Notes under the pieces: generated by a model
Database searches by the model: none
Told to the model about the DNA's origin: nothing
Seen by the model: only the letters and a program-made list of their open reading frames with translations
Assembly (NCBI GenBank): GCA_965655095.1
Contig: OZ296658.1
Span: forward strand, 51,088,001-51,152,000
Length of the DNA stretch: 64,000 nt
From: Haplodiscus bocki
Taxonomy: Eukaryota
Reading direction: 5' to 3'
Position numbers and translations under genes: made by a program
Part shown: one piece after another, positions 18,500 to 50,326 of the stretch
How positions within the stretch are numbered: the first letter of the stretch is position 1
How the letters are laid out: every line of letters begins with the position of its first letter

Positions 18500-21200
18500 T
18501 GGTTTTAAATTAAAAAGGTTGACAAATCAACTTAAGGTAGGAGATGTTAATGTTCAGAAAAATTTAAAGGCAAATAAGTTCTAAATGAGAAAGAGGATAG
18601 AAGTAAAGTATGTAATTTTAGGTATGTGGTGATAAAAAAGGAAATTAGAAAAGAGTAACATTTACAAATCCAATGAGTGCTATACAACAGTGAGAAAGAA
18701 TATTAACATGAAAGGTGTTAAATGCTTAGTCAGATCAGTCTTATAAATTTTTAGGGTGTTTTTTTGAAGGAATGAGTGTATTATGAAAGTCAAGGTAAGG
18801 TTTCAGTTTCTGAATTTATTCAGAGACTTCATCCTGTATTTTTTCAACATGTCCATTGTTTGTTTTTATTAATTCAGCAAACAGTGGGGGGTTAGGTTCT
18901 TGCAATAGAGTGAATAGAGTGCGAATGAATGCAAAATTTTTGAAGTGAATCATGCGAAGATGCATGTCAATTTGCACGTGGTTGTGGTATTTGGAGGAAA
19001 TATATGAGTTTTGTGACTAAAAGGTCAAGTTGTGCAATATTATTTGAAGAGGTTAGGAGATGCATATAAAAGTGAAGTGGTGTAGGAGCGATAGGTTGGG
19101 ACATTTAAGAGTGGAAAAGTTAGTCAGTTTGAGTGGTTAATAGAGAAGGTCGTTGGTTATCGTAAACGTAGAGATGCGGATCATGTATTGAACGACCTTC
19201 ACGTCGGACAATGAGAGGCCGGTTGGGTTTCTTTCTGAATTGTAGAAAAAAAATATTCTTTAGGAGGTTCATAAATCCGGATACGGCCATGCAAGTAAGA
19301 GGAGTTGAGTGTGTATTGAGTTGAGGGTGAATAGGGTGATGAGTTTTTAGTGTGAATGAAAATTCTTTAGTACGCTATGTGTGGTCAGTATAGAATTTTT
19401 CAAAGGACTATCGGTGTATTTTTTTATATGATTGAATCCGATCGAGTGAAGAGTTAGAAGTGGGTAAATTTAGTAGGTCAAAATTCTTGGGTTCAATAAA
19501 GTTAAATCCTAATTGCATCAAGTTAAAGTTAGGTTTACACCAAAAATCATAAGAGTTAGTTGCTTTAGAGACATGTGAACATAGATGATCTTTAGCAGAG
19601 TCTAATGCAAGGAGTGTAAATTGATAATCAGTTTCTTGCATGTAGAATTGAGTTTTTGTAGGGTTGTAGAGAATAGCAGGCGCCTATAACTGGGGGCTGT
19701 GAATATCACGGATTTCAGTAATTGTGTTGGGAAAAAAAGTGTAGGTGGATGGATTGAAGGGGTGCATGGCATCGGTGATGTAAAAGGTGTGGGCTGAAAT
19801 TTGAGGTGTAGAACAGGAAGATATCGTGCGTCGTTAGTGAAATGGCATGCAGGTGGAATTTTGGGTCAAATCTATAGCGTTTATGGATTGGGTACTAGGA
19901 AAGCTAGTTAGAAACAAAGTAGACACGATAGACGGACAACGTGGATTGCTAAATAGGAGTGTAAATGATAGTGAAGCAGTTCTGTTAACACATGCGGATT
20001 GACTGGTTAGTGGAGGTACAAGCATTGATTTGAGATTTCGTGTAGCATGCAAAGAAGTACAGGTAGAGAAATATGGTTCTTAGGAAGAATTAGTAGGAGT
20101 TACTTGTTGAGTGGTACCAGAAGAGTTAGCAAAAAACAATTTTGGGGGGTTTTGAATGTGAGGTGGTAATACTAAAGTATTTTGAAGGTCTTGCAATTGA
20201 ATATTCGATTGTGAAGGAGGAGAACAGTTCACAGGAGGAGGGGTTGCAGGGACCATGTTGATGTCTGATTTTGAGGGATAGTAAGTTCGAGCGACGTCGA
20301 ATTGTTTGAGAAAATAATGTCGAAAGGTAGAAAAACTGGTCTTCGTCTCGGAGCAAAGTAGCGGGTTGGTATGATTTTGAGGGTTCCATCGCAAAAAAAT
20401 GAGAGGAGCATTTTTAAATTAAAATGTTGATCAAAATTTATTACTTTGAGGTTAAAAGAGCTGCAAATTGAAACAAAATTTTTAAAATGATTGCTTTCTA
20501 AGGTAGCGAAGGCATGTACAGCTCTGAAAGAATTAGGTAACATAAGGGTATTGCCCAGAAATAGGCGAAAAGTTTTTTTTTCGTCAACAGACATGCAGCG
20601 ACAGTTAGTTCTTTGAGCTCTCAAATTATACTGGGAAATTTCAACTGAAGTGAGGCAGTTTCGGTTGAAGTTTTTTTTTATTTGACGTCAAATTTGTATT
20701 TCTTTATTTGACGGCAACGTAGACAGCGAAAGTGTCACAGAGAAGTTTTTTGGTGAGAATTTGTTGGAGAGAGTATTGTTTACGAAAAAATTTTATATTT
20801 TTGATTCAAGTAAAACTTCTGCTGAAACTTTTTGTGTGATCAAGGGTTTTTTGACGGTTGGAGCACATTTGTTTGCAAGAAATCATGCAAATAATTAATT
20901 TTTAAAATTAGTTTCTTGATATATTTTACGAGGGTTCGTTAAAAGAACTTCCCATTTGAAATTTGTTTTTGGGTAACCCAAATCGGTGTTGAAAACATTG
21001 CAATTCGGTAATTTGTGGTAATGTAAAACTGTTATCATTCTATTTAGGAAGGTTTTGTGGAGGTGGTTTTTTAGGCAGAAACCGATGAGTTAATTTGTGA
21101 GCGTCAGTTGATTTTCTTCTTAGTAATTGTTGCGTACGTTTAGTATAATTTTTTTGGGGTAGTAAGTCAATTTGGTTAAATGATCCTTTAGATGGTGTGT
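18500..21200 (-). pseudogene. Post-env orphan coding-like region, copy 1
   Basis: Fragment ORFs 19408-19641, 20080-20394 and 20229-20624 recur at homologous positions in the other units; no recognisable domain. Confidence 0.55.
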
Positions 21201-21254
21201 TTAAATATTCGATAGTTGAATTTTAAGAAACAAAGCCAAATTAGGTATAAAATT

Positions 21255-22178
21255 TTATGTTGGTGTAACAACGTCCCCTGCGATATTTTGGGTGGTTTCA
21301 TTTGAAACACGAAGTTTGCTTGATGAATCTGTATTATTGGGAATGGTTGTATTAGAAGATGATTGATTTGGTGGAGTTGACTTTGGGTTTTCATAATTGC
21401 CCCTATTTTTTGGTGGATAGATTGTTCGTTTCAAAAAAAGTTTCTGCTGTTGAAGTGAATAAAACTGCAAAAAAATTATCTGTGAGCCAAAGATTTGAAT
21501 TAATTAAAGAGTAATTAATACATAAATTAGAATTGTTACTGCAAAATGAATAAAAAGTTACAATGCTTATTTCAAACCACATTTTGTTCCGATGTAATAG
21601 GGTCAACCAAAAGTATTGAATTGCATTGTTTTGAACCAGTCTTAATTTGAAAATAGTTTTAGTGTTAAAGTACTATCCGTTGATCCTATTCGCATTTGTA
21701 TTGTCCGATAGCATTGCCAAGAATCTTTTTTGTGGCCAGAATTTGGATTACCATCGTCTAAGAAATCATAGCTTGTTGTTTTACGAAGAACTAGACTTGT
21801 TTTGTCTGAATGCTGTGTCAACAGAAATGTATTCCCAGACTTTTTTATACGTTTAAGTGGATAAAGGCCTCCAGTATGCACAGAGAATGTGTTTGGTTGA
21901 ATTGTACTTCAAAAATCCGGAGGTTTAAAAAGAACTGGAGGTCTTGTTTTACTGGCATTGGTTTTGAAAGATAATAATCATTTCCATCAGGGTTTACTGC
22001 ATTGAAATTAGCTGGGTTACTATCACATGCGATTTCTTTTTCTAACGATTATGTTTGATGACTTACAGGATCTACAAAATAGTGTGTATCTTGACAAAGA
22101 AAGAGTATTTTGTCAAAGTATTTCTCCCTGTGAGTATAAGGCGGAGAAAGATAATGTTGGCATTCACATAACCGAAGC
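21255..22178 (-). pseudogene. env: env C-terminal part (class III fusogen-like), copy 1
   Basis: LRLCECQHYLSP..YFDKIL..YFVDPVSHQT..EIACDSNP..HTGGLYP..LLTQHSDKT, then hydrophobic TM-like segment and Ser/Thr-rich tail. Confidence 0.75.
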
Positions 22179-25100
22179 CATATCGGGATCCATGGTGGTA
22201 TGTGGTTTCTTGGAGGGTCTTCTGTGCTCGCGCGTCCGCTGCGGAGCACACGTCGACTTGTTTTCAAGACCCGCATTACTCGATGTCATACCAAGTACGT
22301 ATTTTGTCAACTATATTTGAAATGGATTCTCTTTGAGTAACAGCCTTGAAGCTTGTCGATAGTAGACCAGACGTCGAGGGTATTGGACCAATCAATACCC
22401 AACCCAACGGTAAACGGACGGCTAATGGAGTTTTGTTTCGGTCGGATCAAAATACTCCAATGGGCGGATACAGTGGAACATATCCTGACCAAGAATCATT
22501 TCGATATCTCCATGACTTTACTTTTCCAAAGAAATTGGTTAAATTTGCCGATATTGGACTTGTATTGAATCGAAATCAATTACTTCGGTTCCAACGTTCA
22601 AGTCTTTTCTCACATACGGCTTGGCTTTAAAAGACGGGCAAGAGCTACCCGAAAGAACCGGTGTCAACTTCAACTGGACAAGTTGTGTGTCAATGGTTTG
22701 ATGTGATTTATTTCCGTGAATTGTAAGTTACAAAACTGTGCCTTGCACATTCAATTTTTTAACCAGATTCTGGGAAGAATACGAGTTATTGCATGCAGAA
22801 TTACAGGGGACAAGGACTTTTCGATTTTGGAAGGATGATTGCAAAAGGACCTCAGTAATCTGCGATAGTCCGTTAACATTCGTCTTGAAGGCCTGCCGGG
22901 GCTCTCTTTTGTTCTGTTCTGCACAACAGTTACATTGCTTACCGTAATTTCCTCAGTTAGTCAGTTTCTTTGCCGTTTTTTGTCGAAAAATTCCTTAGGA
23001 GCCCTGGAGCAAGGTGTTATGACTGCTTGAGCAGCCTTGCTTGAAGCGCGTGCACGATTTTGGACTTTTGCGGAAAGAATGTCGCCCAATCAAGCATCGA
23101 AAACAAGGGTTGTTGTCTGCAACTAATTTCGTCTGTTAGATAGTCGTCTTTTCAAGGAACACCGGACAACGCCACAAGTGTTGCTTTTCTTTACAAGCAG
23201 TACAATTAGTGGTCGAATGTCTGCTTTGTCTCCTATTGATGTTGTTTGATTGGAGCTGCCTGACGCAAATTTTTTGGTTCCGGTCTTCATTCTGATAACA
23301 ATAGCAGATGGGTTGCTGTCTTCGGTTTTCGGTTTTACTGAGGACAATTTAATTCTCCCATGTGCCTCTGCTTTGTTCTTCAACCAATCCTTGAATTTGA
23401 CTGATGTCGGACGATTCCAGTTCTTCTTCACGATATGCATTGAACAAGATCCTTTCAACTTTGGTGGAATTTTCTGTGTCGCTTGGCCTAAGAGGGAAGC
23501 ACTGGGCAAATAGGGATGGTGGTGCAATGACCGAAAAACTCCTCTTAAAGCAGAGATTGTCCCCGAATAACTGATGAAACGTTGACTGATATGCCTTTTC
23601 AGTGGCGGAAGTTTGCTGAGTTGATACACGTAAACACTCACTACTGCCTGTGGCTTCCCGAATTCCATTCTAATGTCTTCTTTGCGCCCTTGTACGAAGT
23701 TCCGCAGTGAGCAAAATCTGCAATCGATGTCTCTGCCTGGCCAATCATTAGAGTCTTTGATTAGATCAATTAATTTAACACCGTCCGTTAGTGAAGCTGA
23801 GCCAAAGGCACTTTTAAACTGGCCTGGCCATTCGTGCCCTTGTAAAGGATTGCCGCTGTATTGCGCCAGTTTCCACTACGTTAGATTGTCTTTTCTTGAG
23901 GACGCCAGCAGTTGAGCTAAATCTTGTACCCTGAAAGCAGTAGGTTCCGATTAAGGCAATAGACCCAGCGGGTACAACTTCGGGTCCTCCAATTGTCATC
24001 GCAGCTGTTAAAACAACGATATTTGGTATAGCACTTCCTTCAAAGTTCGCTCCTGAGGATGAATTCATTTGGTAAACACTGCCACCACCTGTTACAGGAA
24101 CCACTTGTAGAACTGTAGCGTTGTTGCCAATATCCGTTTTTGGTGCTCTTGAAAAGTTTGCGGAGTTGACTATGATATGGCAGTATTTGGCTGTGAAGAT
24201 CCGGTCGTTGGAAAATTTCATGCTGAAAGTTTTGGCAAAACATGGTTGGCTAGCACGGTGAAACTTGAGTTTGGTTTCGAAGTAGCTATCTTTTGTTGAG
24301 CTCAAGGACACAGGGTCGAGGTTTGTTGGTTCTAATTGCGGTTGAGTGGCATTCGATTTAGCGGAGTATTGGGCCTTGTTTAAAGATGACTGAAACGGAC
24401 TTGTCCTATCTTGAACAATAACGGAAGGCGGAGTAATTTCAGTCGCATCGTTGGAAGGAGTCCCCATTAGGAGCACTCCAACTGATACAAAACTTGGACA
24501 TGGTTGCAATCTGTCCACGTCTTTCCGTTTCTACTGTAGAGTCCTGCACCTTAGTAATTTGGTTTTTGACATCGGTTGACGCGTTGGTAACCCAATTATT
24601 CAGTCTCACAACTTTTACACTTTGACTGTGCGCAATAAGTTCGAACAAAGCATCCGGCAGGCTTTGGCAGGTTTTCAAGACTTCTTCGATTAGTTCTAAT
24701 TCAGTCAATGTTGCTTCCACCAGTCTCCTTGTTTTATCTTCTTCCAGCTCAGCAAGCATCAACGCTTGTTCTTTTTTCATTCGCCCTTCTTTCTGCTTGA
24801 GCCACTGGAGGTCAAGTTCTTGGTTCTGCTGAACCAGACGCAACATACCTCAGTTCTGTTTGTCCTTCTTTTGGCGTCGGTATATTGCAATGAAAAGCTG
24901 TCACTGGCTAGATGTCTTAGAAATTCCAGAAGTGGAGCTTTTGAAGTCTGAGAAGCAGACTTGGCTTTCTGATCGGTTTTGACGGAAGACTGCGAAAATT
25001 TCTGCGTTTCAGGAAGGCCACCGGTATACTCACGAGCCCTTTTCAAAACTTTGTCGTTGTCCAGAGTCTAATCGCTCGGCCAGCTTTCCAACTCACTTTT

Positions 25101-25314
25101 CATTGTTTCAGGACCTGTAGTTTTATCTGCCAAAGAGTACCGTTGTTCGTCTTTACTAAATGATTTGGTCATTGCCCTTTCGCACGATTTAACCAAACGT
25201 TCAACTCTTACATTCTTTCCTGCGTTATCTACAGCTTCCATTATTTTTGCTGGTACCTTTTCAACTCCGCCTCCACTTTCGCACGAATTTCATAAAGTTT
25301 TTTCAGGTTTTCAT
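22179..25314 (-). pseudogene. BEL/Pao gag-protease, 3'-truncated
   Basis: DUF1759-type WKLAQYSGNPLQGHEWPGQFKSA..FGKPQAVV, triple zinc knuckle (CFRCL..HSFRKC..C..HNTLL) and DUF1758-type protease region. Confidence 0.85.
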
Positions 25315-25336
25315 GTTGTGAAACAGGCAACACCAA

Positions 25337-26580
25337 AATAGGCGTCGATTTTCCTATGTTTTAGGGGATGTTTCAAAGTTAATTGAAGGTTGCAAAACAA
25401 ATAAAAGATGGGAAGGTCGTTTATTCGTTGTTTTGTGAAAAGTAGTTACGAACTACAAAAGGGTTTTTGAAGACCGGGTTACGTAAACAGAAATTTTCTA
25501 TGGCCTTAGGACTTCATCCAGTCAGCGAAGTCTGGACAATATCGCTAAGGTGAACAAAAAGTAGGGTGATATGACTTTTGAGGTATCAACATGACAATGA
25601 AATCTGGACGCAATCGTGAAAAAGTGTTTGAAGCTGTTGAGAATTCAACCATTCATGGAAGTGTGGACGCAACTCCAGCAGCTGAAAAACGAGCGCGTTT
25701 ACGAAAGGGAAAAGGTGATGTTCGTTTTCTTTTGAGCGTTTTGTGTACGCTAATTAGGTCTTTTCGGTCGGCTTTTAGCAGTAATTGAGGAGAGATCACT
25801 TTTTTCTGCTAAATAAAATCTATGTTCTTCAATTCAATCTGAAGTCTCTTGTGTAATGCTCTCAACTGGTTCAAAAGATGGGTACTAATTTGCTTTCTTA
25901 CGGAGAAAAATCAATTACAATGCTGAACTCTTGAATAAAAATGCTTTTTTCCGTTTCTTGGATTGAATCAAATATACCGGGCGTACGGCCACGCTGGCAA
26001 TACACAAGAGCACTGAGCTTGTCCTGAGGAGTTTCCAAAACCTTTATTAGATTCGGTACTGATATTGGTCGGTAAAAATTACTTTTTTTTCTACAAATGC
26101 TTTTATTCAACACATCGTGCCAAAGAACAACCTCGGTTTTACCTTTCAGAACTTTTAAAAATAAATTTTGCACAAATTTTCTGGGATTTATCGCTTACGG
26201 TTTAGGACTTAGGCCCGGGATAGTGTGAACTTTTTACTTCTACTTTGATTGTTGTTCAGAGCTCAACGCGTATGTCGGAAGATGAATGGAACTTCAAAAA
26301 ATTTTCAACGATTTTCATGCGAAAACGTGTTTTTTTAAAAAAATTCGCGGTTTTAGAGTAAACAACGGGATACTGGGAAAAAATCACAGGTTGTGAAAAC
26401 AAAAGTGCAAACTTTTCGGAGAGATTTTCGAAAAAAAGTTAACAAGTCTTTAGCTCGAAAATATAAAATTTGAGACGTCAGAGATAAAAAGTTCAAGTTT
26501 AATCAAACCGGAACCGGTATTACTCTCGTTCTTTTGGTTCTTCACGTGCTTGAGATAGTTCGATACATTGCTCGTCTACA
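25337..26580 (-). repeat. BEL 5' LTR (type S, ~1.24 kb)
   Basis: Starts TGTAGACG and ends with decayed inverse CGCCTA..; AATAAA ~80 nt before the end; followed by TGGTGTTGCCTG (PBS-like) and the gag ATG at 25314. Confidence 0.65.
25720..26318 (-). pseudogene. SGNH/GDSL-hydrolase-like ORF inside LTR
   Basis: Block-I-like IFxSSIH, block-II HTIPGLS, block-III-like VVLWHDVLNKS, ALVYC strand, block-V-like RALH, basic tail; ~200 codons with stops. Confidence 0.55.
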
Positions 26581-26581
26581 C

Positions 26582-27097
26582 AGGTGAGGTGTTGGAAAAT
26601 CCACAGTTTCATTCGCTTCATTTACCGAATTCTGAGTAAGGCTGGACAATTGATCCATATTTACCGATGTGTTATTTGCAGTCAAGTTTCGGTGTCCATC
26701 ATTACACATCCGATTAGCCATATTGTCAGCTTATTGATTCACTTCGGGTGAATGAGGCGTGGTACCCATCATGTCAGTCACCTTATGCTTTTGACCCATA
26801 AGGTTTGACACTTGAATCATTGCTTCATTAATTGGACGAGGATTGCCAATTTTCTGCACGAAGTCTTTGTTTGCTCTGTGATCAAGATGCCATTAATTTG
26901 ACTCGCACTCTTTTCCTGTGTTGAACTGTCTCATCATCAAACATCTGAAGCGGACACTTAGATCATTCCTGATAGCATCGACTGAAATCATCCGGTAGCT
27001 CTTCGCGGGCACTTTCACTTCCGTAACCTCATTAATGTCAACGATTGCTATGTCTTCCGTTTTGTATTCCGTAAAACAAGGGATTTGACAAGTTTTC
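26582..27097 (-). pseudogene. Fragment of another coding element (possibly post-protease spacer of a Gypsy pol) into which the BEL LTR inserted
   Basis: QIPCFTEYK..EVKVPAKSYRMI.. continuing to ..VDFPTPHL, cut at the LTR TG; partial second copy at 49969-50162. Confidence 0.4.
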
Positions 27098-27102
27098 AAC
27101 TT

Positions 27103-27585
27103 GTGGGAGGTTCAGAGATCATTGAAGGAAGCGTCCAAAAATCCTGTTTGTTGGAAAGATCCAAAAGACAACGTATATGATCTTGGCAGTTATTGCGCCT
27201 AACAGCGTGGTATCTGAGCATTGTTTTTCGGAAGAAACTTTGACAGTCAGGGTAATGGTTCGTACTAGAGTCGTATCCGCAAAGTTTTCTATCTTTGGTA
27301 ACCTGTAATAGTTTTTGCTTTAGCTCTGTTAGATAGATTAACACGTGCTTTATTATTGGCAGCACCATATGGATTTTCATTACAATCAACAACTCGATTT
27401 GGGCTAAAGTGTTGCAAATTAAGACGTCCTCTGCAGTCATAAAGACATACCAGTAGATTATTGATTTTGTCCTGGTGAATTGTTGCGGAAAAATCAGGAG
27501 GGTCGACGGCCCGAGGAGGTTGTGGATTCTTAGTAGAAGAGGGGCGAAGAGTCAAAAAGAAGATGGATAAAATAAATCTGAACAT
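27103..27585 (-). pseudogene. env: env N-terminal part, copy 1
   Basis: Signal peptide MFRFILSIFFLTLRPSST, then LYDCRGRLNLQHFSPNRVVDC..KARVNL..RAKAKTITGY. Confidence 0.75.
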
Positions 27586-27609
27586 GGGTTTTGGAAGGTA
27601 ACGATACGG

Positions 27610-28080
27610 TGTGCAGAACATCAACAGTGTCAAAGACAAACTTAAGTATCGAGCAAACAATGGAAGCACGAAAAGTTTTATAAGTAATTTCTGGACTAAA
27701 ATGGAATTGAATGGACACGCTTATGAAAAGCTGTAAACTCTTCGGCTTCATACAGCTCGTTTTAAGACGACTGTTTCTGAATATCATATATTTCAGTGTG
27801 TATTTGAGCTCAATTCCGCCCTGACTAACAATTTCATCAACACGACAAATTCGATGAACTGGAAAAAGAACAAACATACTTTGATCAATATTCGTACCCA
27901 ATACAATTGAAACGACAATAATAATCTTTCAAGATAACTTGAGACCTTGGGAAGAAAAACATTTCGCCGTTTGCGGGGTTGGAACTTCGGACACTGGAAT
28001 TTCAGTCGGACAATCTAGCTCTAGACCATCGGTCTTCGTAAAAGTTCATTTTTTTCTGTTACATATATTGCTTCGCAACA
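27610..28080 (-). repeat. BEL LTR type T (solo copy, ~470 bp)
   Basis: Starts TGTTGCG, ends TGCACA; flanked by CGGTAC / CCGTAT; homologous to 41311-41781. Confidence 0.6.
27965..28034 (-). ncRNA. tRNA-like Pol III unit in LTR-T (copy 1)
   Basis: A-box-like TGGTCTAGAGCTAG, B-box-like AGTTCCAACC, TTTTT 5 nt downstream. Confidence 0.55.
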
Positions 28081-28229
28081 GTACCGTGTTCGTCAACACG
28101 ATCAAAGTCAAATTCAGTTCCTGAACAAACAAAGGAAGCGGGAAAGGTTTTATACGTGTTTTCTGTACAAAAAAACTGGAGGAAAATAAAAGGCTAAGAA
28201 ACAAACACTAATTGCAAACTGGTTTTTTA

Positions 28230-31200
28230 AGTCCGGTTGTGTGGGATTAGACTTCCTTTAGTCTTTCTGGCAGGGCTAAGACTGAGTGAGCGGTTTATAT
28301 TAAAAATGCCATCTGATTCCATTTCATCAAATAAGTCAGTACCAGCATTCTTTGACAGGAAAAAAGTTGTACTACGTCGATTTGGGATATTCTGATGTGC
28401 AAGTTGAAGTTAGGAGGAGGAGTAGAGACTGAAACTTTGAACAATTCGTTCAACACAGGGAAAAGATTTTTCGTATATCTCAACCGAGGAGGTTGTAAAC
28501 TTAAGAAGATTATCTATTGGCCTTACATGAAAAAAAGGCGAATGTTTTAAGGGCAAACTTAAATTTACAGTTTGAATTACTTTCGGGAGTAGATGGTGAT
28601 CGAGACCTAATTGGAGTCGGAGTACATATGGTGATGATTGAACAATTGCCAGAGAGTTTGTGGGTTTAGTTAAAATTTTAGGTGAAAGACTTCCTGGAGG
28701 GCGTGATATAGGAAAGGAGCTCCAAGTTATATGATTTATTGCACCGGTGTTTTTGAAATCATCATCAGATAGAGTGATTGCATCATCTGAAAGAAAAATA
28801 GTATCGTTAAAATGGCTACCCTGGAGTAGGTCTGGGAGGATTCAAGTTCGAGGATTCTTTTGGTTTGCGTTTGATGAAGAATGTTCGGTAGAACGAAATT
28901 AAACTGTACCTTGCCTTGAGAGAGAGTAGTTTGGGAAAGAGTCTTTTCAATTCTTGTTACAGAGTGTCCAAATTCAGAAAAAAAAGAATAGTTCTGATTT
29001 TAACTTTCAACTCTGTTTAGTGACTGAGTATAAATTTTTATTTAGTACTTTATTCACGGCAAAGTTGAACAAAAGTAGTTATCGGGAACAATTTTGAAAT
29101 TGAAAAACGAATTGATTTTAAGCTTGTAAACAAAAAGTGATTTTTATAAGATTATAAAAGCAATTACGAATTCTTTTCGAGGTGCTCACTGATTGGTCAT
29201 CATGTTGTTGAGTTTTGTGAAATTTTTCGTGCCAGGCTTAAATCTTTTCCTCCGATTCGTTTGTTTCAAACGTCTTGACACTTTAATGTCTTTTGATTCC
29301 GTTTTGATGACGTTAAAATTCGTTTGAGTTCTTTTTAAACCATAATTTCATTACATGAGCTCAAATTGAACTTTCAAGAACGGAATATTTTTTCCGATAA
29401 AAATTGGGGGGCTGCCTACGGAGACTGCTTCTGAGTCTTCACTGGGAGAATGTTGTATTTACGAAAATTGCGGCGTCAAATTGAGACACTGTTGGTAATA
29501 TTCCGTCTGATTGAGGATTTTAATTTGACTGTTTGGTAGATTTTGGGAAGATATTGTGTCAAGTGGAGACCCTGGCTGTATATGTTTGGTTAATTGAGTA
29601 ATTTTCCTTTGACTAATTGGCACCCTTTGGAATCGTCCTGAAGTTTCAAATGATAATGGTGACGAAAAGTCGGCGTCGAGATGGGTGTGCAAGTTGTCAA
29701 ATAAACTGGGATCCCCTGAGGTGTCCCCGTCGGAAATATCTATAGATGCACACCGGGAACTACCGGGAGACTGTATATTTTCTGGTGTTTTAAATGGGAA
29801 AATGGTGATAAGAGGCTTAAATGAGACGTTTCAAAACTTTCGAAAAAAATTGTCTAATTACTGTTTGAGGAGGTCAAATGTGATTAGTCGATTTGTGTGT
29901 GCTTATAAAACAATTCCTTGAATAGACATTCTTTCGTAAATTACATCTGTTATTTTTCTCACAGCATAATTTTGGCCTTTTTTAATGTTTGAAATTTTTC
30001 AGATTATTTCGGGTTTTTTTGCAACTTCTGTGTGAAACAAAGATGCATTCTTTTAATTTATATGCCTTGCCAAATCTGTTATTTCTTCCAGGTTTAGACA
30101 ATCATCTCTCTTTAATTGTCAATTTTTGACAAAAATAGAAATCACAACAATGATTTTGCCATTTACAGTGTATATGAAAACAATGGTTTCGATAAAAGTG
30201 ATTGAATTACTCTGATCCGATCCGTTAACTTTTTATGCGAGTGGATTAGTATATATCTGTAAAATGAGCTAATTTAGATAACACTTTGATTGTGAGTATA
30301 TTCTGAAGGAAATTCGATTGGCACTCGAGGTATGTCTTTGAATACCTTTTCATCTGGGGAAAATTGAGTGAGAATTTGAGTATTATGAGCAGAATTAAAA
30401 AACTGCGCTTGGTCTCACCAATGGATATTAACTTGTTAATTTGCTGTGTAGTGGTTGGACTAAATCATCCAAGGTGCCAAATAAGCTAATCCAGCTCTCA
30501 ACTATGCCATTCCCCCAGGAATGTGAAGGTATCTCGGACAATATTTAGAGACCAAGGAATTGCCCAGATTTGCAATTATGGTTGGAAAATTTTCTGTTTC
30601 TTTGTCAGTGACTATATTTTTCCGTGGGCCGAAAAAAAATTCGACTGGTTTACTAAAACATCTGCTGCGTCATTTAGTTGATTTGACTTGGTAACGACGA
30701 AATGTGTGAGTGCATCGAGAATGGCAAAGCTTCAACAATTTCACTCTGATGCATAGTGGAGCTTTCCTTTGTTTTCCATGCTGCTACGCTAAATAAATCC
30801 TCCATTAGTTTCAACAAATTCAAGTTGAGGAGCGATGTTGATATCCATTCTGAAAACTTCTGTAGTTTGACAGGATGGACAAACTTTTTAATTGAAGATC
30901 AATCCTTTTTCGTAGGCCGGGAAAATGAAAACGAGTTTGAAGTCATTACAAGTGCCTTCCTGATCATAATGATCGGAAATGTCAAACCAGTGTTCTTTAA
31001 AAATCGGTGCATAGTATTTTTATCGGTAAGCAAGATTGTCTTTCGGTAATGGATGACACTAAAGTCCCCAATAAAATGTCATTTGGAGAAGGTCCGAATT
31101 TTAACCATCTGATAAAAGGCGATATCGTTCAGAAAATGATTTGGAGATCTATTTGCTTTAACTGTCGCAGTTTTTTGGTAGGTATTGTAGTGGATGGCTC

Positions 31201-41310: not shown

Positions 41311-41781
41311 TGTGCGGAATATCAACAGGATCAACAAGAAATTTCTGTCTCCAACAAACAATGGAAGCAGGAAAGTTTTCATAACTGATTTCTGGACTTA
41401 AATGGTATTGGATGGACATGTTTGTGAAAAACTGTACACTCTCCAGCTTACTACATCTCAATTTAAAACGACTGTTTCTGAATATCATTTGTTTCAGTGT
41501 GTATTGGAGCTCATTTCCGCCCTGAATAACGTTCTCTTTAACATGACATAATTCGACCAACTGGCAAAAGAACACTTCTACATTTATCAATATTAGTGAA
41601 AAATACAACTGAATCATCATTAAGATTTTTTCAAGATTTTGTGAGACTAAGAAACAAAATTTGTTTCGCCGTTAGCGGCATTGGAACCCCAGACACTGGA
41701 ATCTCAGTCCCACACTCTAACTCTAAACCATCGGTCCTCGTAAGAGTACTTTTTTTCTTTTATATACATTGCTTTGCAACA
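41311..41781 (-). repeat. BEL 3' LTR type T
   Basis: Directly follows the BEL integrase tail and PPT-like CCGGAGAA; TGTTGC start, CCGCACA end, then CGGTAC. Confidence 0.7.
41667..41736 (-). ncRNA. tRNA-like Pol III unit in LTR-T (copy 2)
   Basis: GACCGATGGTTTAGAGTTAGAGTGTGGGACTGAGATTCCAGTGTCTGGGGTTCCAATGCCGCTAACGGCG followed by TTTT. Confidence 0.55.
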
Positions 41782-41914: not shown

Positions 41915-44900
41915 TCAACGAAAAAAGTTTACGAGGGATCCGGGGGTGGTAAAACATGAGCGGGTTTTACAATTGAACGTATCAGATTTCCCGACAACGT
42001 TTTTATTTCTGGTTCTAGCAATGGCGTCACCAACGTAATTTAATTTGACAACACCTGCAAGCGTGTAGTATCCTCTTGGACCAGTAGCTTCAACAATCCA
42101 AACCAGATCGCCGGTTCTCAGGTCTTGGTCTATCGACGAAAACCAATTGGATCGGTGATTCAAAAGCGGGACGTACTCTCTGAACCATCGACTTCAGATC
42201 GTAACGTTTTCTGTGGTCAAAATCGCTACTCAGAGTTGATGGTAAACTTGAGCCGGATCTTCCTAGCAGGAAGTGGCTGGAGTCAAAACATCCAATTCAG
42301 TCGCATCAGCATTTGTTTGAATTAGTGGACGGGAGTTTCGAATTTGTTCAGCTAGACAGAATGTAGTCGTCAGAATCCCGTCGGTTGTGGGGTCCTTCCG
42401 CCACAAAAAACCGAGAGACGGTCGGTCGTTTGGAATTGCTTTTTTTTGAAAAAAACTTTCCCTCGATGTCAGCAGAAACTGCATACGAGTACCTGTGGTG
42501 ACGGAATAGCAGACGAATAAGGTTTTGCAACAGGTGACGCCCCTGTTAGAAGTGCACTGGTGAGCGGATGGCCATGAAATTCAGCTGTGCCGTTGAGGAC
42601 TCGTCGTAATTCGCCGGGTTTGTGCGGGTGATACACAAGGTGATGTGGTAAACACCCTTCACGGGGTTGGTCGATCTTAAAATAAACGCAATTTTTGACT
42701 GCGACGATATAACTATTTGAAAGATTGTCAGTTTTGGTCGTAGAATACTGCTCTTCTAAATTCGGATCTTTCCGAAGACAGCGTTCAAGGGACTTGAGCT
42801 GAATTAATTCCGAAATATAGTTGTTCGACATTATATTTTTTGTGATTAGCTCAAAGCACACCAACGTGATATCGGGATCTATCGTGGTATGTAGTTTCTT
42901 GGAGGGTCTTCTGTGCTCGCGCATGCGCTGCGGAGCACACGTCGACTTCTTTTTAAGACCCGCATTACTCGATGTCATACCAAGTACGGATTTCGGCAAC
43001 TACATTTGAATTGGATTCTCTTTGAGTAACAGCCTTGAAGCTTGTCGGTAGTAGAACAGACGTCGAGGGTATTGGACTAATCAATACCTACCCCAACAGT
43101 AAACGGACGGCTAATGGAGTATTGTTTCGGTGGTATCAAAATACTCAATGGGCGGATAGAGAGGAACATATCCTGACCAAGAATCATTTCGACATCTCCA
43201 TGACTTTACTTTTCCAAAGAAATTGGTTATATTTGCCGATATTGGACTTGTAGTGAATCGAAATCAATTACTTCGGTTCCAACGTTCAAGTCTTTTCTCA
43301 CATACGGCTTGGCCTTAAAAGACGGGCAAGAGCTACCCGAAAGAACCGGTGTCAACTTCAACTGGACAAGTTGTGTGTCAATGGTTTGATGTGGTTTATT
43401 TCCGTGAACTGTGTGTATCAAAACTGTGCCTTGCACATTCAATTTTTTCAACCAAATTCTGGGAAGAATACGAGGTATTGCATGCAGAATTACAGGGGAC
43501 AAGGACTTTTTGAATTGGGAAGGATGATTGCAAAAGGACCTCAGTAATTTGCAATAGTCCGTTAACATTCGCCTTGAAGACATGCCGGGGCTCTCATCTG
43601 TTTTGTTCTGTACATCTGTTACAATGCCTACCGTAATTTCCTCAGTTTAGTCAGTTCTTTGCCGTTTTTTGTCGAAAAGTTCTTTCGGAGCCATGGAGCA
43701 AGGTATTATGACTGTTTGAGCAGCCTTGCTTGAAAAGCGTGCACGATTTTGGGCATTTGCGGAAAGAATGTGGCCTAATCAAGCATCGAAAACAAGGGTT
43801 GTTGTCTGCAACTAATTTCGTCCGTTGGGTAGTCGTCTTTCCAAGGAACACCGGACAACGCCACAAGGGTTGCTTTTCTTTACAAGCAGTACAATTAGTG
43901 GTCGAATGTCCGCTTTGTCTCCCATTGATGTTGTTTGATTGGAGCTGGCTGACGCAAATTTTTTGGTTCCGGTCTTCATTCTGATAACAATAGCAGATGG
44001 GTTGCTGTCTTCGGTTTTCGGTTTTTCTCAGTACAATTTATTTCTCTCATGTGCCTCTGCTTTGTTCTTCAACCAAACCTCGAATTTGAGTGTTGTCGGA
44101 CGATTTCAGTTCTTCTTCACGATATGCATTGATTGAGATCCTTTCAGCTTTGGTGGAATTTTTCTGTGTCGCTTGGCCCAAAAGTGATGCACTCGGGAGA
44201 TAAGGATGGTGGTGCAATGACCGAAAAACTCCTCTTAAAGCAGTAATTGTCGCCGAATAACTGATGAAACTTCCATTCATATGCCTTTTCAGTGGTGGAA
44301 GTTTGCTGAGTTTGTACATTTAAGCACTCACCACTGACTGTGGCTGCCCGAGTTCCGTTCTAATGTCTTCATTGCGCCCTTGTACGAAGTTCCGCAGTGA
44401 GGAAATTCTGCAATCGACGTCTTTGCCTGGCCAGTCACTAGAGTCTTTGATTACATCAATTTAACACCGTCCGTTAGTGGAGCTGAGTGAAGGGCACTCT
44501 TAAACTGGCCTAGCCATTTGAGCCCTTGTAAAGGATCTCCGCTATTTTGCGCCAGTTTCCACTGCGGTCAATAGTCTTTTCTTGAGGACGCCAGCAGTTG
44601 AGCTCAATCTTGTACCCTGAAAGCAGTAGGTTCCGTTCAAGGCAATAGACCCAGCGGGTACAACTTCGGGTCCTCCAACTGTCATCGGAGCTGTTAAAAC
44701 AACGATGTTTGGTATAGCACTTCCTACAAAGTTCGGTCCTGAGGATGAATTCAATTGGTAAACACTGCCACCACCTGTTACAGGAACCACTTGTAGAACT
44801 GTAGCGTTGTTGTCACTATCCGTTTTTGGTGCTCTTGAAAAGTTTGCGGAGTTGACTATGATATGGCAACATTTGGCTGTGAAGATCCGGTCGTTGGAAA

Positions 44901-45993
44901 TTTCCATGCTGAAAGTTTTGGCAAAACTTGGTTGGCTAGCACGGTAAAACTTGAGTTTGGTTTCGAATTGACTATCTTTTGTTGAGCTCAATGACTCAGA
45001 ATCAAGCTTTGTTGGTTCTAATTGAGGTTGAGTGGCATGCGATTGAACGCAGTATTGGGCCTTGTTTTATGATGACTGAAACGGATTTGTCCTATCTTGA
45101 ACAAAAACGGAAGTCGGAGTAATTTCAGTCGCATCGTTGGAAGGAATCCCCATTAGAAGCACTCCAACTGATACAAAACATGGACTTGGTTGCAATCTGT
45201 CTGCATCTTTCTGTTTCTACAGTAGAGTCTTGCACCTTAGTAAGTTGATTTTTGACATCGGTTGACGCGTTAGTAACCCATTTATTTATTCTTATAAATT
45301 TTACACTTTGACTGTGCGCAATAAGTTCGGACAAAGCATCTGGCAGGATTTGGCTGGTTTTCGAGACATCTTCGATTAGTTCTAAATCAGTCAATGTTGC
45401 TTCCACCAGTCTCCTTGTTTTATCTTCTTCCAGTTCAACAAGCATCAACGCTTGTTCTTTTTTCATTCTCTCCTCTTTCTGCTTGAGCCACTGAAGGTCA
45501 ACTTCTTGGTTCTGCTGAACCAGACGCATTATACCTACGTTCTGTTTGTCCTTTTCTCGCGTCGGTGTATTGCAATGAAAGGTTCCTGCTCTCACCGGCT
45601 AGATGTCTTAGAAATTCCAGATGTGGAGGTTTTGAAGTCTGAGAAGCAGACTTGGCTTTCTGATCGGTTTTGACGGAAGACTGAGAAGTTTTATGCGTTT
45701 TAGGAAGGCCATCGATATACTCACGAGCTTTTTTAAAAACTTTGTCGTTGTCCAGAGTCACGTCGCTCGGCCAGCTTTTCAATGCTTCGGGATCTGTAGT
45801 TTTATTTGCGAAAGAGTACAATTGGTCGTCTTTACTAAATGATTTCGTCATTGCCCTTTCGCACGATTTAACCAAACGTTCAACTCTTACATTCTTTCCT
45901 GCGTTATCTACAGCTTCCATTATTTTTGCTGGTACCTTTTCAACTCCGCCTCCACTTTCGCACGAATTTCATAAAGTTTTTTCAGGTTTTCAT
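41915..45993 (-). pseudogene. BEL/Pao polyprotein with internal deletion (gag, protease, RT N-half fused to IN C-terminus)
   Basis: DUF1759 gag; WRCPVF..CFRCL..HSFRKC..C..HNTLLH; RT LPHHLVYHPHKPGELRRVLNG, YAVSADIEG, FLWRKDP; DUF5641-type LRTGDLVWIVE..PRGYY. Confidence 0.9.
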
Positions 45994-48900
45994 GTTGTAA
46001 AACAGGCATCGCCAAATTAGGCTTCGGTTTTCCTACGTTTAAGGGATATTTCTAGGCTAATTGAAGGTGGCAAAACAAATAAAAGACAGGAAGTTCTTTT
46101 ATTTTTTGTATTTTGAAAAGTAGTTACGAACTACAAAGGGGTTTATGAAGACCGGGTTACGTAAACAGAAATTTTCTAAGGCTTTAGACTTCACCCAGTC
46201 AGCGGAGTCTGGACAATATCGCTAAGGTGAACAAAAAGTAGGGGGATATGACCTTTGAGGTATCAACTTGACAATGAAGTCTGGCCGCAATCGTGAAAAA
46301 GTGTTTGAAGCTGTTGAGAAATTAACCATTCAATGAAGTGTGGACGCAACTCCAGCAGCTGAAAAAAGGAGGGGGTTTACGAAAGGGAAAAAGTGACGTT
46401 CGTTTACTTTTGAGCGTTTCGTGTACGCTTATTAGGTCTTTTCGGTCGGATTTCAGAAGTAATTGAAGAGAGATCACTTTTTTCTTCTAAAAAAATCTAT
46501 GTTCATCATTTCAATCTCAAGTCTATGGTGTAACGTTCGCAACTGGTTCAAAAGATTGGGACTAATTTGCTTTCTTACGGAGAAAAATCATTTAAAATGC
46601 TGAACTCTTGAATAAAAAAGCCTAATTGCGTTTCTTGCAGTGAATCAAATATATCGGGCGTACGGCCACGCTGGCAATACACAAGAGCACTGAGCTTGTC
46701 CTGAAGAGTTTGCAAAATATTTATCAGATTCGGTACTGATAATGGTCGGTAATTTTTACTTTTTTTTCTACAAATGCTTTTATTCAGCACATCGTGCCTA
46801 ACAGCAACCTAGGTTTTACCTTTCAGATCCTTCAAAAATAAATTTTGCACAAAGTTTCTCGGTCTTATCGCTTAGGCTTAGGACTTAGGCCCGGGATAGC
46901 GTAAACTTTTTACTTCTACTTTGATTGTTGTTCAGAGCTCAATGCGTATGTCGCAAGATGAAAAGAACTTTAAGAAATTGTCAACGATTTTCATTTGAAA
47001 ACGTGTTTTTTTAAAGAAAAATTGGGGGCTTTAGAGTAAACAACCGGATACTGGGAATATATCACAGGCTGTGAAAACAAAAATGCAAAATTTTCGGAAA
47101 GATTTTCGAAAAAATTTTTACAAGTCTTGAACTCGAAAGTATAAAATTTGAGATATCAAAGGTTTAAAACTCAAGTTTAATCAAACCGGAACCGGTATTA
47201 CTCTCGTTCTTTCAGTTCCTCACGTGCTTGAGATAGTTCGAGATATTGCTCGTCTACACAGGTGAGGTGTTGGACAATCCACAGTTTCATTCGCTTCATC
47301 AACCGAATTGTGATCTTCATCTACCAAAAGTTTTTTCAGGTTTTCATGTTGTGAAGCAGGCAACGCCAAATTAGGCGTCGGTTTTCCTACGTTTTAAGGG
47401 ATATTTCTAGGCTAATTGAAGGTGGCAAAACAAATAAAAGATGGGAAATCCTTTTATTCTTTGTATTTTGAAAAGTAGTTACGAACTACAAAGGGGTTTA
47501 TGAAGACCGGGTTACGTAAACAGAAATTTTCTGAGGCCTTAGGACTAAGCCCAGTCAGCGGAGTCTGGACAATATCACTAAGGTGAACAAAAGTTAGGGT
47601 GATATGACCTTTGAGGTATCAACTTGACAATGAAGTCTGGACGCAATTGTGAAAAAGTGTTTGAAGCTGTTTAGAAATCAACCATCCAATGAAGTGTGGA
47701 CGCAACTCCAGCAGCTGAAAAAACGAGGGGGTTTACGAAAGGGAAAAAGTGACGTTCGTTTTCTTTTGAGCTTTTCGTGTACGCTTATTAGGTCTTTTCG
47801 GTCGGCTTTTAGCAGTAATTGAGGAGAGATCACTTTTTTCTTCTGAAAAAAATCTATGTTCATCAATTCAATCTCAAGTCTATGGTGTAATGTTCTCAAC
47901 GGGTTCAAAAGATTGGGACTAATTTGCTTTCTTACGGAGAAAAATCATTGGAAATGCTGAACTCTTGAATAAAAAAGCTTATTTGCGTTTCTTGGAGTGA
48001 ATCAAATATATCAGGCGTACGGCCACGCTGGCAATACACAAGAGCACTGAGCTTGTCCTGAGGAGTTTGCAAAATATTTATCAGATTCGGTACTGATAAT
48101 GGTCGGTAATTATTACTTTTTTTTCTACAAATGCTTTTATTCAGCACATCGTGCCAAACAACAACCTAGGTTTTATCTTTCAGATCTTTCAAAAAAAATT
48201 TGCACAAATTTTCTCGGTCTTATCGCTTACGGTTTAGGACTTAGGCCCGGGATAGCGTAAACTTTTTACTTCTACTTTGATTGTTGTTCAGAGCTCAATG
48301 CGTATGTCGCAAGATGGATAGAACTTTAAGAAATTGTCAACGATTTTCATTTGAAAACGTGTTTTTTTAAAGAAAAATTCGGGGCTTTAGAGTAAACAAC
48401 CGGATACTAGGAATAGATAACAGGCTGTGAAAACACAAATGCAAAATTTTCGGAAAGATTTTCGAAAAAATTTTTACAAGTCTTGAACTCGAAAAAATAA
48501 AATTTGAGACATCAAAGGTTTAAAACTCAAGTTTAATCAAACCGGAACCGGTATTAATCTCGTTCTTTCGGTTCCTCACGTGCTTGAGATAGTTTGAGAT
48601 ATTGCTCGTCTACACAGGTGAGGTGTTGGACAATCTACAGTTTAATTTGCTTCATCAACCGAATTGTGATCTTCATCTAACAAAAGTTCTTTCAGGTTTT
48701 CATGTTGTGAAGCAGGCAACACCAACTTACGCGTCGGTTTCCCTACGTTTTAAGGGATATTTCTAGGCTAATTGAAGGTGGCAAAACAAAAAAAAATGGG
48801 AAGTTCTTTTATTCTTTGTATTTTGAAAAGTAGTTACGAACTACAAAGGGGTTTATGAAGACCGGGTTACGTAAACAGAAATTTTCTAAGGCTTTAGACT

Positions 48901-50025
48901 TCACCCAGTCAGCGGAGTCTGGACAATATCGCTAAGGTGAACAAAAAGTAGGGGGATATGACCTTTGAGGTATCAACTTGACAATGAAGTCTGGCCGCAA
49001 TCGTGAAAAAGTGTTTGAAGCTGTTGAGAAATTAACCATTCAATGAAATGTGGACGCAACTCCAGCAGCTGAAAAAAGGAGGGGGTTTACGAAAGTGAAA
49101 AACTGACGTTCGTTCTCTTTTGAGCGTTTCTTGTACGCTTATTAGGTCGTTTCGGTCGGCTTTTAGCAGTAATTGAGGAGAGATCATTTTTTTCTGCGAA
49201 ATAAAATCTATGTTCTTTTATTCAATCTCAAGTCTCTGGTGTAATGCTCTCAACTGGTTCAAAAGATTGTGACTAGTTTGCTTTCTTACGGAGAAAAATC
49301 ATTTAAAATGCTGAACTCTTGAATAAAAATGCTTTTTTTCCGTTTTTTGGAGTGAATCAAATATATCAGGCGTACGGCCTCGCTGGCAAAACACAAGAGC
49401 ATTGAGCTTGTTCTGAAGAGTTTGCAAAACATTTATCAGATTCAGTACTGATAATGGTCGGTAATTATTACTTTTTTTCTACAAATGTTTTTATTCAGCA
49501 CATCGTGCCAAACAACAACCTAGGTTTTACCTTTCAGATCTTTCAAAAACAAATTTTCCACAAATTTTCTCGGATTTATCGCTTACGGTTTAGGACTTAG
49601 GCCCGGTATAGCGTAAACTTTTTACTTCTACTTTGATTGTTGTTCAGAGCTCAACGCGTATGTCGCAAGATGAATAGAACTTCAAAAATTTTCAACCATT
49701 TTCATGCGAAAACGTGTCTTTTTTTTGAAAATTTGGGGCTTTAGAGTAAACAACGGGATACTGGGAAAGTATCACAGGTTGTGAAAACAACAGTGCAATC
49801 TTTTCGGAAAGATTTTTTAAAAAGTTTTATCAAGTCTTGCTCTCAAAAATATAAAATTTGAGATGTCAAAGATTTAACGTTCAAGTTTAATCAAACCGGA
49901 ACCGGTATTACTCTCGTTGTTTCGGTTCTTCAAGTGCTTGAAATAGTTCGATACATTGCTCGTCTACACATGTGAGGTGTTGAACAATCCACAGTTTCAT
50001 TCGCTTCATCTACCGAATTGTGAGT
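45975..50025. repeat. Three tandem ~1355-bp units, each LTR-S with SGNH-like ORF plus short flanks
   Basis: LTR starts (cgtctaca on +) end at 47258, 48614 and 49968; ORF ATGs at 46994, 48350 and 49705. Confidence 0.92.
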
Positions 50026-50164
50026 AAGGCTGGACAATTGATCCATATTTACGGATATGTTATTTGCAGTCATGTTTCGGTGTCCGTCATTATACATCTG
50101 ATTAGCCTTATTGTCAGCTAATTGATTCATTTCGGGTGAACGAGGCATGCTACCCACCATGTCA

Positions 50165-50326
50165 ATAAGAATCTTTCAAGATAATTTGAGACCTTAAGAG
50201 AAAATGTTTTTCGCCGTTTGCGGGGTTGGAACCTCGGACACTGGAATCTCAGTCGGACACTCTAGCTCTAGACCATCGGTCTTCGTAAAAGTTCTTTTTT
50301 TCCGTTACATATATTGCTTCGCAACA
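50165..50326 (-). repeat. Truncated LTR-T (5' part)
   Basis: TGTTGCGAAG start at 50326 preceded by CGGCAC; truncated by a deletion at ~50165. Confidence 0.65.
50212..50281 (-). ncRNA. tRNA-like Pol III unit in LTR-T (copy 3)
   Basis: GACCGATGGTCTAGAGCTAGAGTGTCCGACTGAGATTCCAGTGTCCGAGGTTCCAACCCCGCAAACGGCG followed by aaaaacaTTTT. Confidence 0.55.

What the first reader, a model, noticed from the sequence alone, without database searches (positions are those of the whole stretch)
25337..26580. SGNH-hydrolase-like ORF encoded inside a BEL/Pao LTR
Seen: a ~1.24-kb TG-started segment directly upstream of the PBS and gag contains a sense ~200-codon frame (IxxSSxH..IPGLS..VVxWHDVLNxS..ALVYC..LH, basic tail) ahead of the AATAAA; four copies are in the window. 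Known: SGNH domains occur in ORF1 of CR1/L2/RTEX LINEs and as the RNA-binding OSK domain, and LTR-encoded proteins are rare (MMTV sag, HIV nef overlap). Inference: an LTR-borne esterase-fold or RNA-binding accessory gene with a non-canonical block III.
Basis: partly seen in the sequence, partly recalled or inferred. Interest (0 to 1): 0.75.

Follow-up and report, generated by a model that had tools for sequence, protein, structure and literature searches.

The report
Decayed BEL/Pao esterase-like pre-gag gene
The 1.24-kb segment is not a long terminal repeat: it is the worn-out front part of a BEL/Pao retrotransposon that carries, ahead of gag, a small extra gene for an esterase-shaped (SGNH-fold) protein, an accessory gene that LINE elements in the same genome also carry.

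Summary
The ~200-codon frame is real, but it lies on the minus strand and is broken in all four window copies. The four copies share the same stop codons. They are one dead insertion copied by a ~20-kb segmental duplication and a local 1,355-bp triplication.

The segment is not an LTR. The true LTR is a 357-bp repeat (28080->27724) lying 1.4 kb upstream of the frame. Five intact relatives in assembly ERZ25074608 all read: LTR (337-341 bp, 100% identical pairs), PBS, ~800-nt leader, ORF (200-202 aa), 240-430-nt spacer, gag-pol (966-2138 aa), PPT, LTR. Each has its own 5-bp target duplication.

The same family (at least 810 clusters at 50% identity) is also the ORF0 of CR1-like LINEs and precedes another LTR element. 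Earlier notes of this scan already reported that on other DNA. GDSL genes in LTR elements are published for rotifers. This is a new variant of a known kind.

The parts
27724..28080 (-). True 5' LTR of the window's BEL/Pao copy 1 (357 bp, starts TGTTG, ends ..TTTTCA). It contains a tRNA-like stretch.
   Evidence: Aligns with the LTRs of full-length relatives and with the window's own 3' LTR (A4). End motif located; sequence read.
26294..27723 (-). Leader between the LTR and the accessory ORF. The PBS position directly after the LTR is decayed (TAAGCGTGTCCAT against TGGTGGCCATAGAG in intact relatives).
   Evidence: No PBS match with up to 3 mismatches anywhere in the window.
25702..26293 (-). 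Remnant of the SGNH-fold accessory ORF, copy 1 (aligns to residues 8-206 of P0001). It has two frameshifts and several stops, and the start is lost.
   Evidence: tblastn; three-frame translation.
25294..26635 (-).
   Evidence: Self-BLAST and repeat families D1-D4.
22165..25244 (-). gag-pol remnant of copy 1 (residues 30-1063 of a 2135-aa BEL/Pao polyprotein: gag and protease), cut off at ~22180.
   Evidence: tblastn with the L042 gag-pol. DUF1759 gag domain found in a genomic relative.
45973..50023 (-). Three tandem copies of the unit (period ~1355 bp) in the duplicated block. ORF remnants lie at 49681->49090, 48325->47736 and 46969->46380, all broken, with stops shared with copy 1.
41936..45923 (-). 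gag-pol remnant of copy 2 (residues 30-1220, then 1972-2131; RT-RH-IN largely deleted), ending with the DUF5641-type C-terminus of pol.
   Evidence: tblastn.
41425..41781 (-). 3' LTR of copy 2, preceded by a PPT-like TTGAACCCGGAGAA and ~155 nt after the end of pol.
50163..50326 (-). Truncated 5' LTR of copy 2 (first ~164 bp). The rest of the LTR and the leader are deleted.

Best explanation
The segment is the decayed pre-gag region of a BEL/Pao LTR retrotransposon on the minus strand: part of the 5' leader, a ~200-codon accessory gene, and the spacer before gag. It is not an LTR. Shown: functional relatives are built LTR (337-341 bp) - PBS - ~800-nt leader - ORF (200-204 aa) - 240-430-nt spacer - gag-pol (~2135 aa: DUF1759 gag, Pao protease, RT, RNase H, integrase, DUF5641) - PPT - LTR. 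Shown: the ORF encodes a stand-alone protein with an SGNH-hydrolase fold. The block I Ser (G/A-A-S-S in place of G-D-S), block II Gly, block III Asn (W-H-D-x-x-N-N) and block V His (L-H-P/Q) are conserved, the triad Asp is missing, and a basic NLS-like tail (..RPKRPSKRAR..) is added. Shown: it evolves under purifying selection as strong as gag-pol and belongs to a large unannotated family also used as ORF0 by CR1-like LINEs. Inferred: it is an esterase or lipid-binding accessory factor that works like the esterase domain of CR1/L2 ORF1p, linking the element's RNA-protein particle to membranes or lipids, or removing an acyl group from a host molecule. Inferred: it is made as the first cistron of the genomic RNA. 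gag-pol would then be reached by leaky scanning or reinitiation (AUGs between the two starts are depleted), or from another transcript. The window's four copies are dead duplicates of a single insertion.
Against: There is no sequence-level link to SGNH families. Pfam finds nothing in 199 members. The PDB sequence profile search finds nothing. hhalign and hmmsearch against canonical SGNH proteins of the same genome find nothing. The catalytic Asp is absent and the Asp of GDS is replaced, so catalysis is unproven. Residue-level superposition of S8/G34/N71/H155 on a solved active site could not be inspected. No RNA data were available, so expression and the route to gag-pol translation are inferences. 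The leader has 6-8 AUGs, which argues against simple cap-dependent scanning to the ORF.
Confidence: 0.85

Rival explanations
1. One reading: the 1.24-kb segment is the LTR of the BEL/Pao element, so the SGNH-like protein is encoded inside an LTR, like MMTV sag.
For: The segment lies upstream of gag and is repeated in the window.
Against: It occurs once per element in all full-length relatives, whose real LTRs are 337-366 bp and lie further upstream and after pol. In the window the repeat after pol is the 357-bp LTR, not this segment. The tandem copies have a 1355-bp period that includes the gag-proximal spacer, and they share stop codons, so they are a local duplication.
Confidence: 0.02
2. 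The protein keeps the SGNH fold but is catalytically dead. It would act as an RNA-binding or RNP-assembly factor, as the OSK domain of Oskar does, with the basic C-terminal tail binding nucleic acid or directing nuclear import.
Confidence: 0.25
3. The ORF block is an unrelated element (for example a LINE 5' fragment with its ORF0) that inserted by chance into this BEL/Pao copy.
For: The same protein family is ORF0 of CR1-like LINEs in this genome.
Against: Every copy of this BEL/Pao family examined has the ORF at the same place. This holds for dozens of own-genome copies and for several subfamilies of intact elements. The ORFs linked to LTR elements group apart from the LINE ORF0s in a small tree with 100/99 support.
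Confidence: 0.02
4. The ORF is a passenger without function for the element, such as a captured host gene that is drifting.
For: No activity or expression data exist.
Against: dN/dS is 0.07-0.19 between subfamilies. Length is conserved at 200-205 aa in hundreds of copies. The ORF is retained in elements with identical LTRs.
Confidence: 0.04

Closest known systems
Esterase (ES) domain of ORF1p of CR1/L2/RTEX LINEs, e.g. ZfL2-1 (Kapitonov & Jurka 2003; Schneider et al. 2013, PMC3905857)
   Same: It is an SGNH fold carried by a retroelement, encoded upstream of the polymerase gene. PAF-AH-like structures are among the best matches for both (paper read). It is the likely functional analogue (lipid or membrane interaction).
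   Different: The ES domain is fused to a coiled coil or PHD inside ORF1p and has a full S-D-H triad (S143, D279, H282). The protein here is a free-standing ~200-aa ORF in an LTR element that also has gag. It has no triad Asp and no detectable sequence similarity to canonical SGNH.
GDSL esterase/lipase ORF3 of Vesta LTR retrotransposons and Athena/Terminon Penelope-like elements of bdelloid rotifers (Rodriguez, Kenefick & Arkhipova 2017, PMC5408684)
   Same: It is an SGNH/GDSL accessory ORF in an LTR retrotransposon, and the same ORF type is shared between different retroelement classes.
   Different: The rotifer ORF3 lies downstream of pol, in the Vesta clade rather than BEL/Pao, and was recognisable by HHpred as GDSL. 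Here the ORF lies upstream of gag in BEL/Pao and the sharing partner is a CR1-like LINE.
OSK domain of Drosophila Oskar (PDB 5a4a)
   Different: OSK has lost the catalytic residues and is fused to a LOTUS domain. Here S, G, N and H are conserved and the protein stands alone.
Bacterial and eukaryotic SGNH enzymes: OatA C-terminal domain (6vjp), acetyl xylan esterase (7ddy), GDSL lipase (3p94), PAF-AH Ib alpha (1bwp)
   Different: Sequence identity is only 12-16%. The motifs deviate (AASS, WHDxxNN, LHP without Asp), and there is a basic C-terminal tail.
Three-ORF CR1-like LINEs with a stand-alone SGNH-like ORF0 in this same genome (scan notes s1-382571, s1-382575)
   Same: It is the same protein family. 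P0212 and the L067 ORF0 match the family profile at E about 1e-31 and are followed by PHD-type ORF1, an RRM-like ORF1 part and an APE endonuclease.
   Different: The host element is a LINE rather than a BEL/Pao LTR element. LINE and LTR versions separate in a small tree.

Membership tests
   The ORF block occurs once per element. Terminal repeats are a different 337-366-bp sequence. The window's 3' LTR is at 41781->41425.
PBS TGGTGGCCATAGAGAGG and PPT GGGCCCGGAGGA flank the short LTR, ~800 nt upstream of the ORF.
BEL/Pao LTR retrotransposon (the element as a whole) | gag with DUF1759, Pao-type aspartic protease (Peptidase_A17), RT, RNase H, integrase with DUF5641, in that order | tested here: met
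   Pfam families on the 2127-2139-aa polyproteins of relatives. DUF1759 in own-genome copy L026. The window copies align to residues 30-1063 and 30-1220 plus 1972-2131.
BEL/Pao LTR retrotransposon (the element as a whole) | TG..CA LTRs with a short target-site duplication | tested here: met
   TGTTG...TTTTACA LTRs with five different perfect 5-bp TSDs in L041-L045.
SGNH/GDSL hydrolase superfamily | Three-layer alpha/beta/alpha fold with five parallel strands, as in solved SGNH enzymes | tested here: met
SGNH/GDSL hydrolase superfamily | Block I nucleophile Ser in a GDS(L) motif at the end of strand 1 | tested here: inconclusive
   Ser8 is nearly invariant and sits at the strand 1/helix 1 junction. 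The motif is (G/A)-A-S-S, with the Asp replaced by Ala.
SGNH/GDSL hydrolase superfamily | Block II Gly and block III Asn (oxyanion hole) | tested here: met
   Gly34 (after strand 2) and Asn71 (after strand 3) are at least 90% conserved in 82 members only 27-50% identical. Block III reads W-H-D-x-x-N-N, not GxND. Positions were judged from secondary-structure order, not from a superposition.
SGNH/GDSL hydrolase superfamily | Block V His, with Asp three residues before it (DxxH) | tested here: inconclusive
   His155 is nearly invariant (L-H-P/Q), but the position three residues before it is not Asp. A Ser-His dyad is possible.
SGNH/GDSL hydrolase superfamily | Significant match to a curated SGNH sequence model (Pfam Lipase_GDSL, Lipase_GDSL_2 and similar) | tested here: not met
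   No such hit at E<=1 in 117 + 82 members, nor in the PDB profile search, nor by hhalign or hmmsearch against own-genome SGNH proteins.
SGNH/GDSL hydrolase superfamily | Esterase or acyl-transfer activity | not testable with these tools
   This needs recombinant protein and an assay.
OSK domain (Oskar) | SGNH-like fold with the catalytic residues lost, fused to a LOTUS domain | tested here: not met
CR1/L2-type LINE ORF1p esterase domain | Esterase fused within ORF1p (coiled coil or PHD + ES) of a non-LTR element, with an S-D-H triad | tested here: not met
   The ORF here is separate and sits in an LTR element. Even in the LINE relatives it is a separate ORF0 ahead of the PHD ORF1. There is no triad Asp.

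The most novel reading that the evidence does not exclude
A large, unannotated family of free-standing ~200-aa SGNH-fold proteins (at least 810 clusters at 50% identity, more than 2000 candidate loci in this genome alone) is a portable first-cistron module. It has moved between CR1-like LINEs, BEL/Pao and at least one other LTR retrotransposon lineage. It is an active Ser-His esterase needed for retrotransposition, which would point to a shared lipid- or acyl-dependent step in otherwise unrelated retroelement life cycles.
Probability: 0.3. Interest if true: 0.7.

Novelty: new variant of a known kind. Interest (0 to 1): 0.45.

Why it matters
SGNH esterases are a recurring but unexplained accessory of retroelements. 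They occur in the ORF1p of CR1/L2/RTEX LINEs and in the ORF3 of rotifer Vesta and Athena elements. This BEL/Pao lineage carries the fold as a separate gene ahead of gag. It is under purifying selection as strong as gag-pol, and the same protein family serves as ORF0 of LINEs in the same genome. That supports the view that retroelements of different classes draw on a common pool of accessory genes. It also offers young, intact elements (identical LTRs) in which the role of the esterase could be tested. On the practical side, the family has no Pfam model, and the block can be mistaken for an LTR, as happened here. The window copy itself is dead and of no functional interest.

Tried and rejected
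- Pfam scans of single ORFs and of 199 family members found no SGNH or OSK family. The only hits were weak and scattered (TPR_ZFYVE26, DUF1639, KaiA_N), taken as chance.
- The PDB sequence profile search gave nothing below E 0.1.
- hhalign of the family profile against single canonical SGNH proteins of this genome (L052 C-terminal domain, L054 ORF0) gave probability below 1%. hmmsearch of the family profiles against them scored no better than shuffles.
- Two attempts to build a canonical SGNH profile failed. The L054 ORF0 has only 7 close homologues. The L052 domain found none in the allowed length range.
- A PBS pattern taken from one subfamily (TGGTCCACCGACCCG) is absent from the window. The window copy has a decayed version of the other PBS form.
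Full-length structure therefore rests on L031 (3' LTR start visible) and on the intact elements of assembly ERZ25074608.
- ARAGORN finds no tRNA gene in the window.
- No RNA runs are on record for this organism.
- The idea that 27723-28080 encodes an RT fragment upstream of the ORF was rejected. It is the true LTR, and in L037 the same repeat interrupts the RT.
- The tree of 13 sequences is too small to give the direction of transfer. The RVP-type LTR member joins a long branch.

Full report
**Observation.**
Its longest intact piece is a 91-aa ORF at 25898-26173 containing VVLWHDVLNKS and ALVYC.

Self-comparison shows a 1,342-bp unit (25294-26635) with three tandem copies at 45973-50023, period about 1,355 bp, all about 90% identical. 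These copies sit inside a much larger repeat. The block 17192-34823 recurs at 34828-57046 and again from 57564 to the window end, so the window is a ~20-kb segmental tandem duplication.

Three-frame translation shows that all four ORF remnants are broken. They share stop codons at the same positions and have all lost the first strand with the start codon. They therefore descend from one copy that was already dead, not from four transpositions.

**What surrounds it.**
tblastn with an intact BEL/Pao polyprotein places gag-protease directly downstream on the minus strand, at 25244->22165 (residues 30-1063) and at 45923->42854.

The second copy continues into RT and then jumps to the pol C-terminus (residues 1972-2131, ending at 41936). 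About 155 nt after that pol end, preceded by a PPT-like TTGAACCCGGAGAA, lies a 357-bp repeat (41781->41425). It is homologous to 28080->27724, which lies 1.4 kb upstream of the ORF remnant in copy 1.

Both repeats start with TGTTG and end with TTTTCA, and they align with the LTRs of full-length relatives (A4).

**Genome-wide copies.**
The unit is a dispersed repeat, with 44 scored matches at 72-80% identity. In nearly every copy it is followed collinearly by gag. In a few copies an internal deletion joins it to the protease.

In 10-kb loci the unit never occurs twice. In L031 a 359-bp direct repeat brackets the element. One copy lies ~600 bp upstream of the unit and is followed at once by a TGG-starting PBS. 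The other lies just after the C-terminal end of pol. The same LTR/PBS junction is found upstream of the unit in four further own-genome places.

**Intact relatives.**
The word-index protein search found more than 200 proteins of 200-205 aa at 53-100% identity. None has a Pfam domain or a name.

Their contigs in ENA assembly ERZ25074608 carry complete elements. For example, L042 reads:
- 5' LTR at 8866-9202
- ORF at 10001-10609
- gag-pol at 11035-17442 (2135 aa with DUF1759, Pao protease, RVT_1, Integrase_H2C2 and DUF5641)
- 3' LTR at 17609-17945

The LTR pairs are 100% identical. Five elements have five different perfect 5-bp target duplications, a common PBS (TGGTGGCCATAGAGAGG) and a common PPT (GGGCCCGGAGGA).

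The ORF is therefore an internal gene between PBS and gag.

**The protein.**
Between subfamilies, dN/dS of the ORF is 0.07-0.19, against 0.09-0.15 for gag-pol of the same elements.

An exhaustive profile search found 810 clusters at 50% identity with E <= 1e-3, 501 of them at E <= 1e-10. Across 82 members only 27-50% identical to P0009, these residues are at least 90% conserved: Ala7, Ser8, Gly34, Trp65-His66-Asp67, Asn71, Tyr105, Ser138 and His155. The consensus reads MVxIxGASSL .. PGLSxNP .. IWHDxINNS .. AIVYCxRxGTP .. LHP, followed by a basic tail.

No Pfam family and no PDB sequence matches.

For that second model all 50 top chains have the SGNH fold:

Foldseek gives probability 0.99-1.00 for GDSL lipases. 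The ESM Atlas shape search (best TM 0.59 to a GDSL cluster) and its language-model neighbours (GDSL clusters; Annelida and Mollusca) agree.

In the model, Ser8 follows strand 1 at the start of helix 1, Gly34 follows strand 2, Asn71 follows strand 3, and His155 lies in a late loop. That is the SGNH block order. The Asp of GDS and the Asp of DxxH are both absent, so a Ser-His dyad or a non-catalytic role both remain possible. I could not inspect a residue-level superposition.

**Relation to other elements.**
A family member from another data set (P0212) is followed by a PHD-type ORF.

In this genome, L067 carries the same architecture: ORF0 of this family, then a PHD ORF1, an RRM-like ORF1 part and an APE endonuclease. 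That is a three-ORF CR1-like LINE. Another member (P0269) precedes a polyprotein with a retroviral-type protease. More than 2000 candidate loci exist in this genome.

In a 13-sequence tree the LINE ORF0s separate from the LTR-linked ORFs with 100/99 support. The tree is too small to infer direction of transfer.

This reproduces what earlier notes of this scan reported on other DNA of the same genome. I tested those notes rather than relying on them.

A second, unrelated kind of LINE ORF0 with a recognisable Pfam GDSL match also exists here (L054). It shows no similarity to this family.

**Literature.**
Esterase domains in CR1/L2/RTEX ORF1p are established. ZfL2-1 has an S143/D279/H282 triad, is active and binds acidic phospholipids (PMC3905857).

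GDSL ORF3s occur in Vesta LTR retrotransposons and Athena Penelope-like elements of bdelloid rotifers, with sharing between element classes (PMC5408684).

Three full-text searches found no report of a pre-gag SGNH ORF in BEL/Pao or of a free-standing LINE ORF0 esterase. Two papers on LTR elements were checked and do not mention one. The library is not exhaustive.

**Mechanism (inferred).**
The protein most likely works like the LINE esterase, as a lipid or membrane-interacting factor or a deacylating factor for the particle. Its basic tail may serve nuclear import or RNA contact.

ATG triplets between the ORF start and the gag start are depleted: 2-6 observed against 9-13 in dinucleotide shuffles, with 0-24 of 300 shuffles as low. 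That fits leaky scanning or reinitiation. The 800-nt leader, however, carries 6-8 ATGs, so another transcript or internal entry is equally possible. No RNA runs were available.

**Verdict.**
The LTR interpretation is refuted. The SGNH-fold interpretation is supported at the level of predicted structure and conserved residues. The case is a new variant of a known kind and was already met elsewhere in this scan. The window copies are dead duplicates.

All searches and models used natural sequences.

Noticed in passing
window 17192-34823, 34828-57046, 57564-64000: The whole window is a ~20-kb segmental tandem duplication at ~90% identity, with indels. For example, 39807-42869 is present only in the second unit and 26776-27916 only in the first. 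A further unit lies just beyond the window (L005), and an 82%-identical copy lies 1.4 Mb away (L006/L040).
   Followed up: partly
window 17200-22180, 34830-39810, 58930-63910: The repeated ~5-kb block next to the truncated BEL/Pao copy has a very strong GC skew on the plus strand (0.33-0.47). First-reader notes file it under a Ty3/gypsy element with an envelope gene.
   Followed up: no
window 27975-28035 (minus strand) and 41650-41781: The true BEL/Pao LTR contains a tRNA-like stretch (GGTCTAGAGCTAGA..GTTCCAACCCC), also present in the LTRs of L031, L036 and L042. ARAGORN calls no tRNA in the window. A first-reader note (s1-359339) flags it as a possible Pol III unit.
   Followed up: partly
window 40848-41424 (minus strand): The 3' LTR of copy 2 is followed by ~580 bp homologous to the post-LTR leader (27723->27146). 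The 5' LTRs are preceded by PPT-like sequence. This suggests a head-to-tail pair of elements sharing one LTR, with the second element truncated.
   Followed up: partly
L042, L047, L048 (ORF against gag-pol): Between the same pairs of elements, synonymous divergence of the accessory ORF (dS 0.23-0.52) is 3-4 times lower than that of gag-pol (0.84-2.0). This points to recombination between subfamilies or to RNA-level constraint on the ORF region.
   Followed up: no
L054:1438-3300: This is a different LINE-like unit. A 204-aa stand-alone ORF gives a recognisable Pfam Lipase_GDSL_2 match (IGGNN, DGVHL blocks) and is followed by a Cys-rich 312-aa ORF. It is unrelated in sequence to the family studied here, so two separate SGNH 'ORF0' families coexist in this genome.
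   Followed up: partly
L052:1372-2943 (minus strand): An intact 523-aa ORF combines DUF4078 with a C-terminal canonical GDSL domain (GDS, GLND, DGIHP). Whether it is a host gene or a LINE ORF1p with a coiled coil was not determined.
   Followed up: no
L037:2600-3800, L028-L030: In a deletion subfamily the ORF block is joined directly to the protease (gag missing). It lies next to Cys-rich LDL-receptor-class-A-like open frames and a tandem 'NPQQK' repeat.
   Followed up: no
L031 2893-2945 against L042 9195-9225: Two PBS forms occur in the family. TGGTCCACCGACCCG lies directly after the LTR in one own-genome subfamily. TGGTGGCCATAGAGAGG is used in the intact elements and also lies ~40 nt further on in the first subfamily. 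The primer tRNAs were not identified.
   Followed up: no
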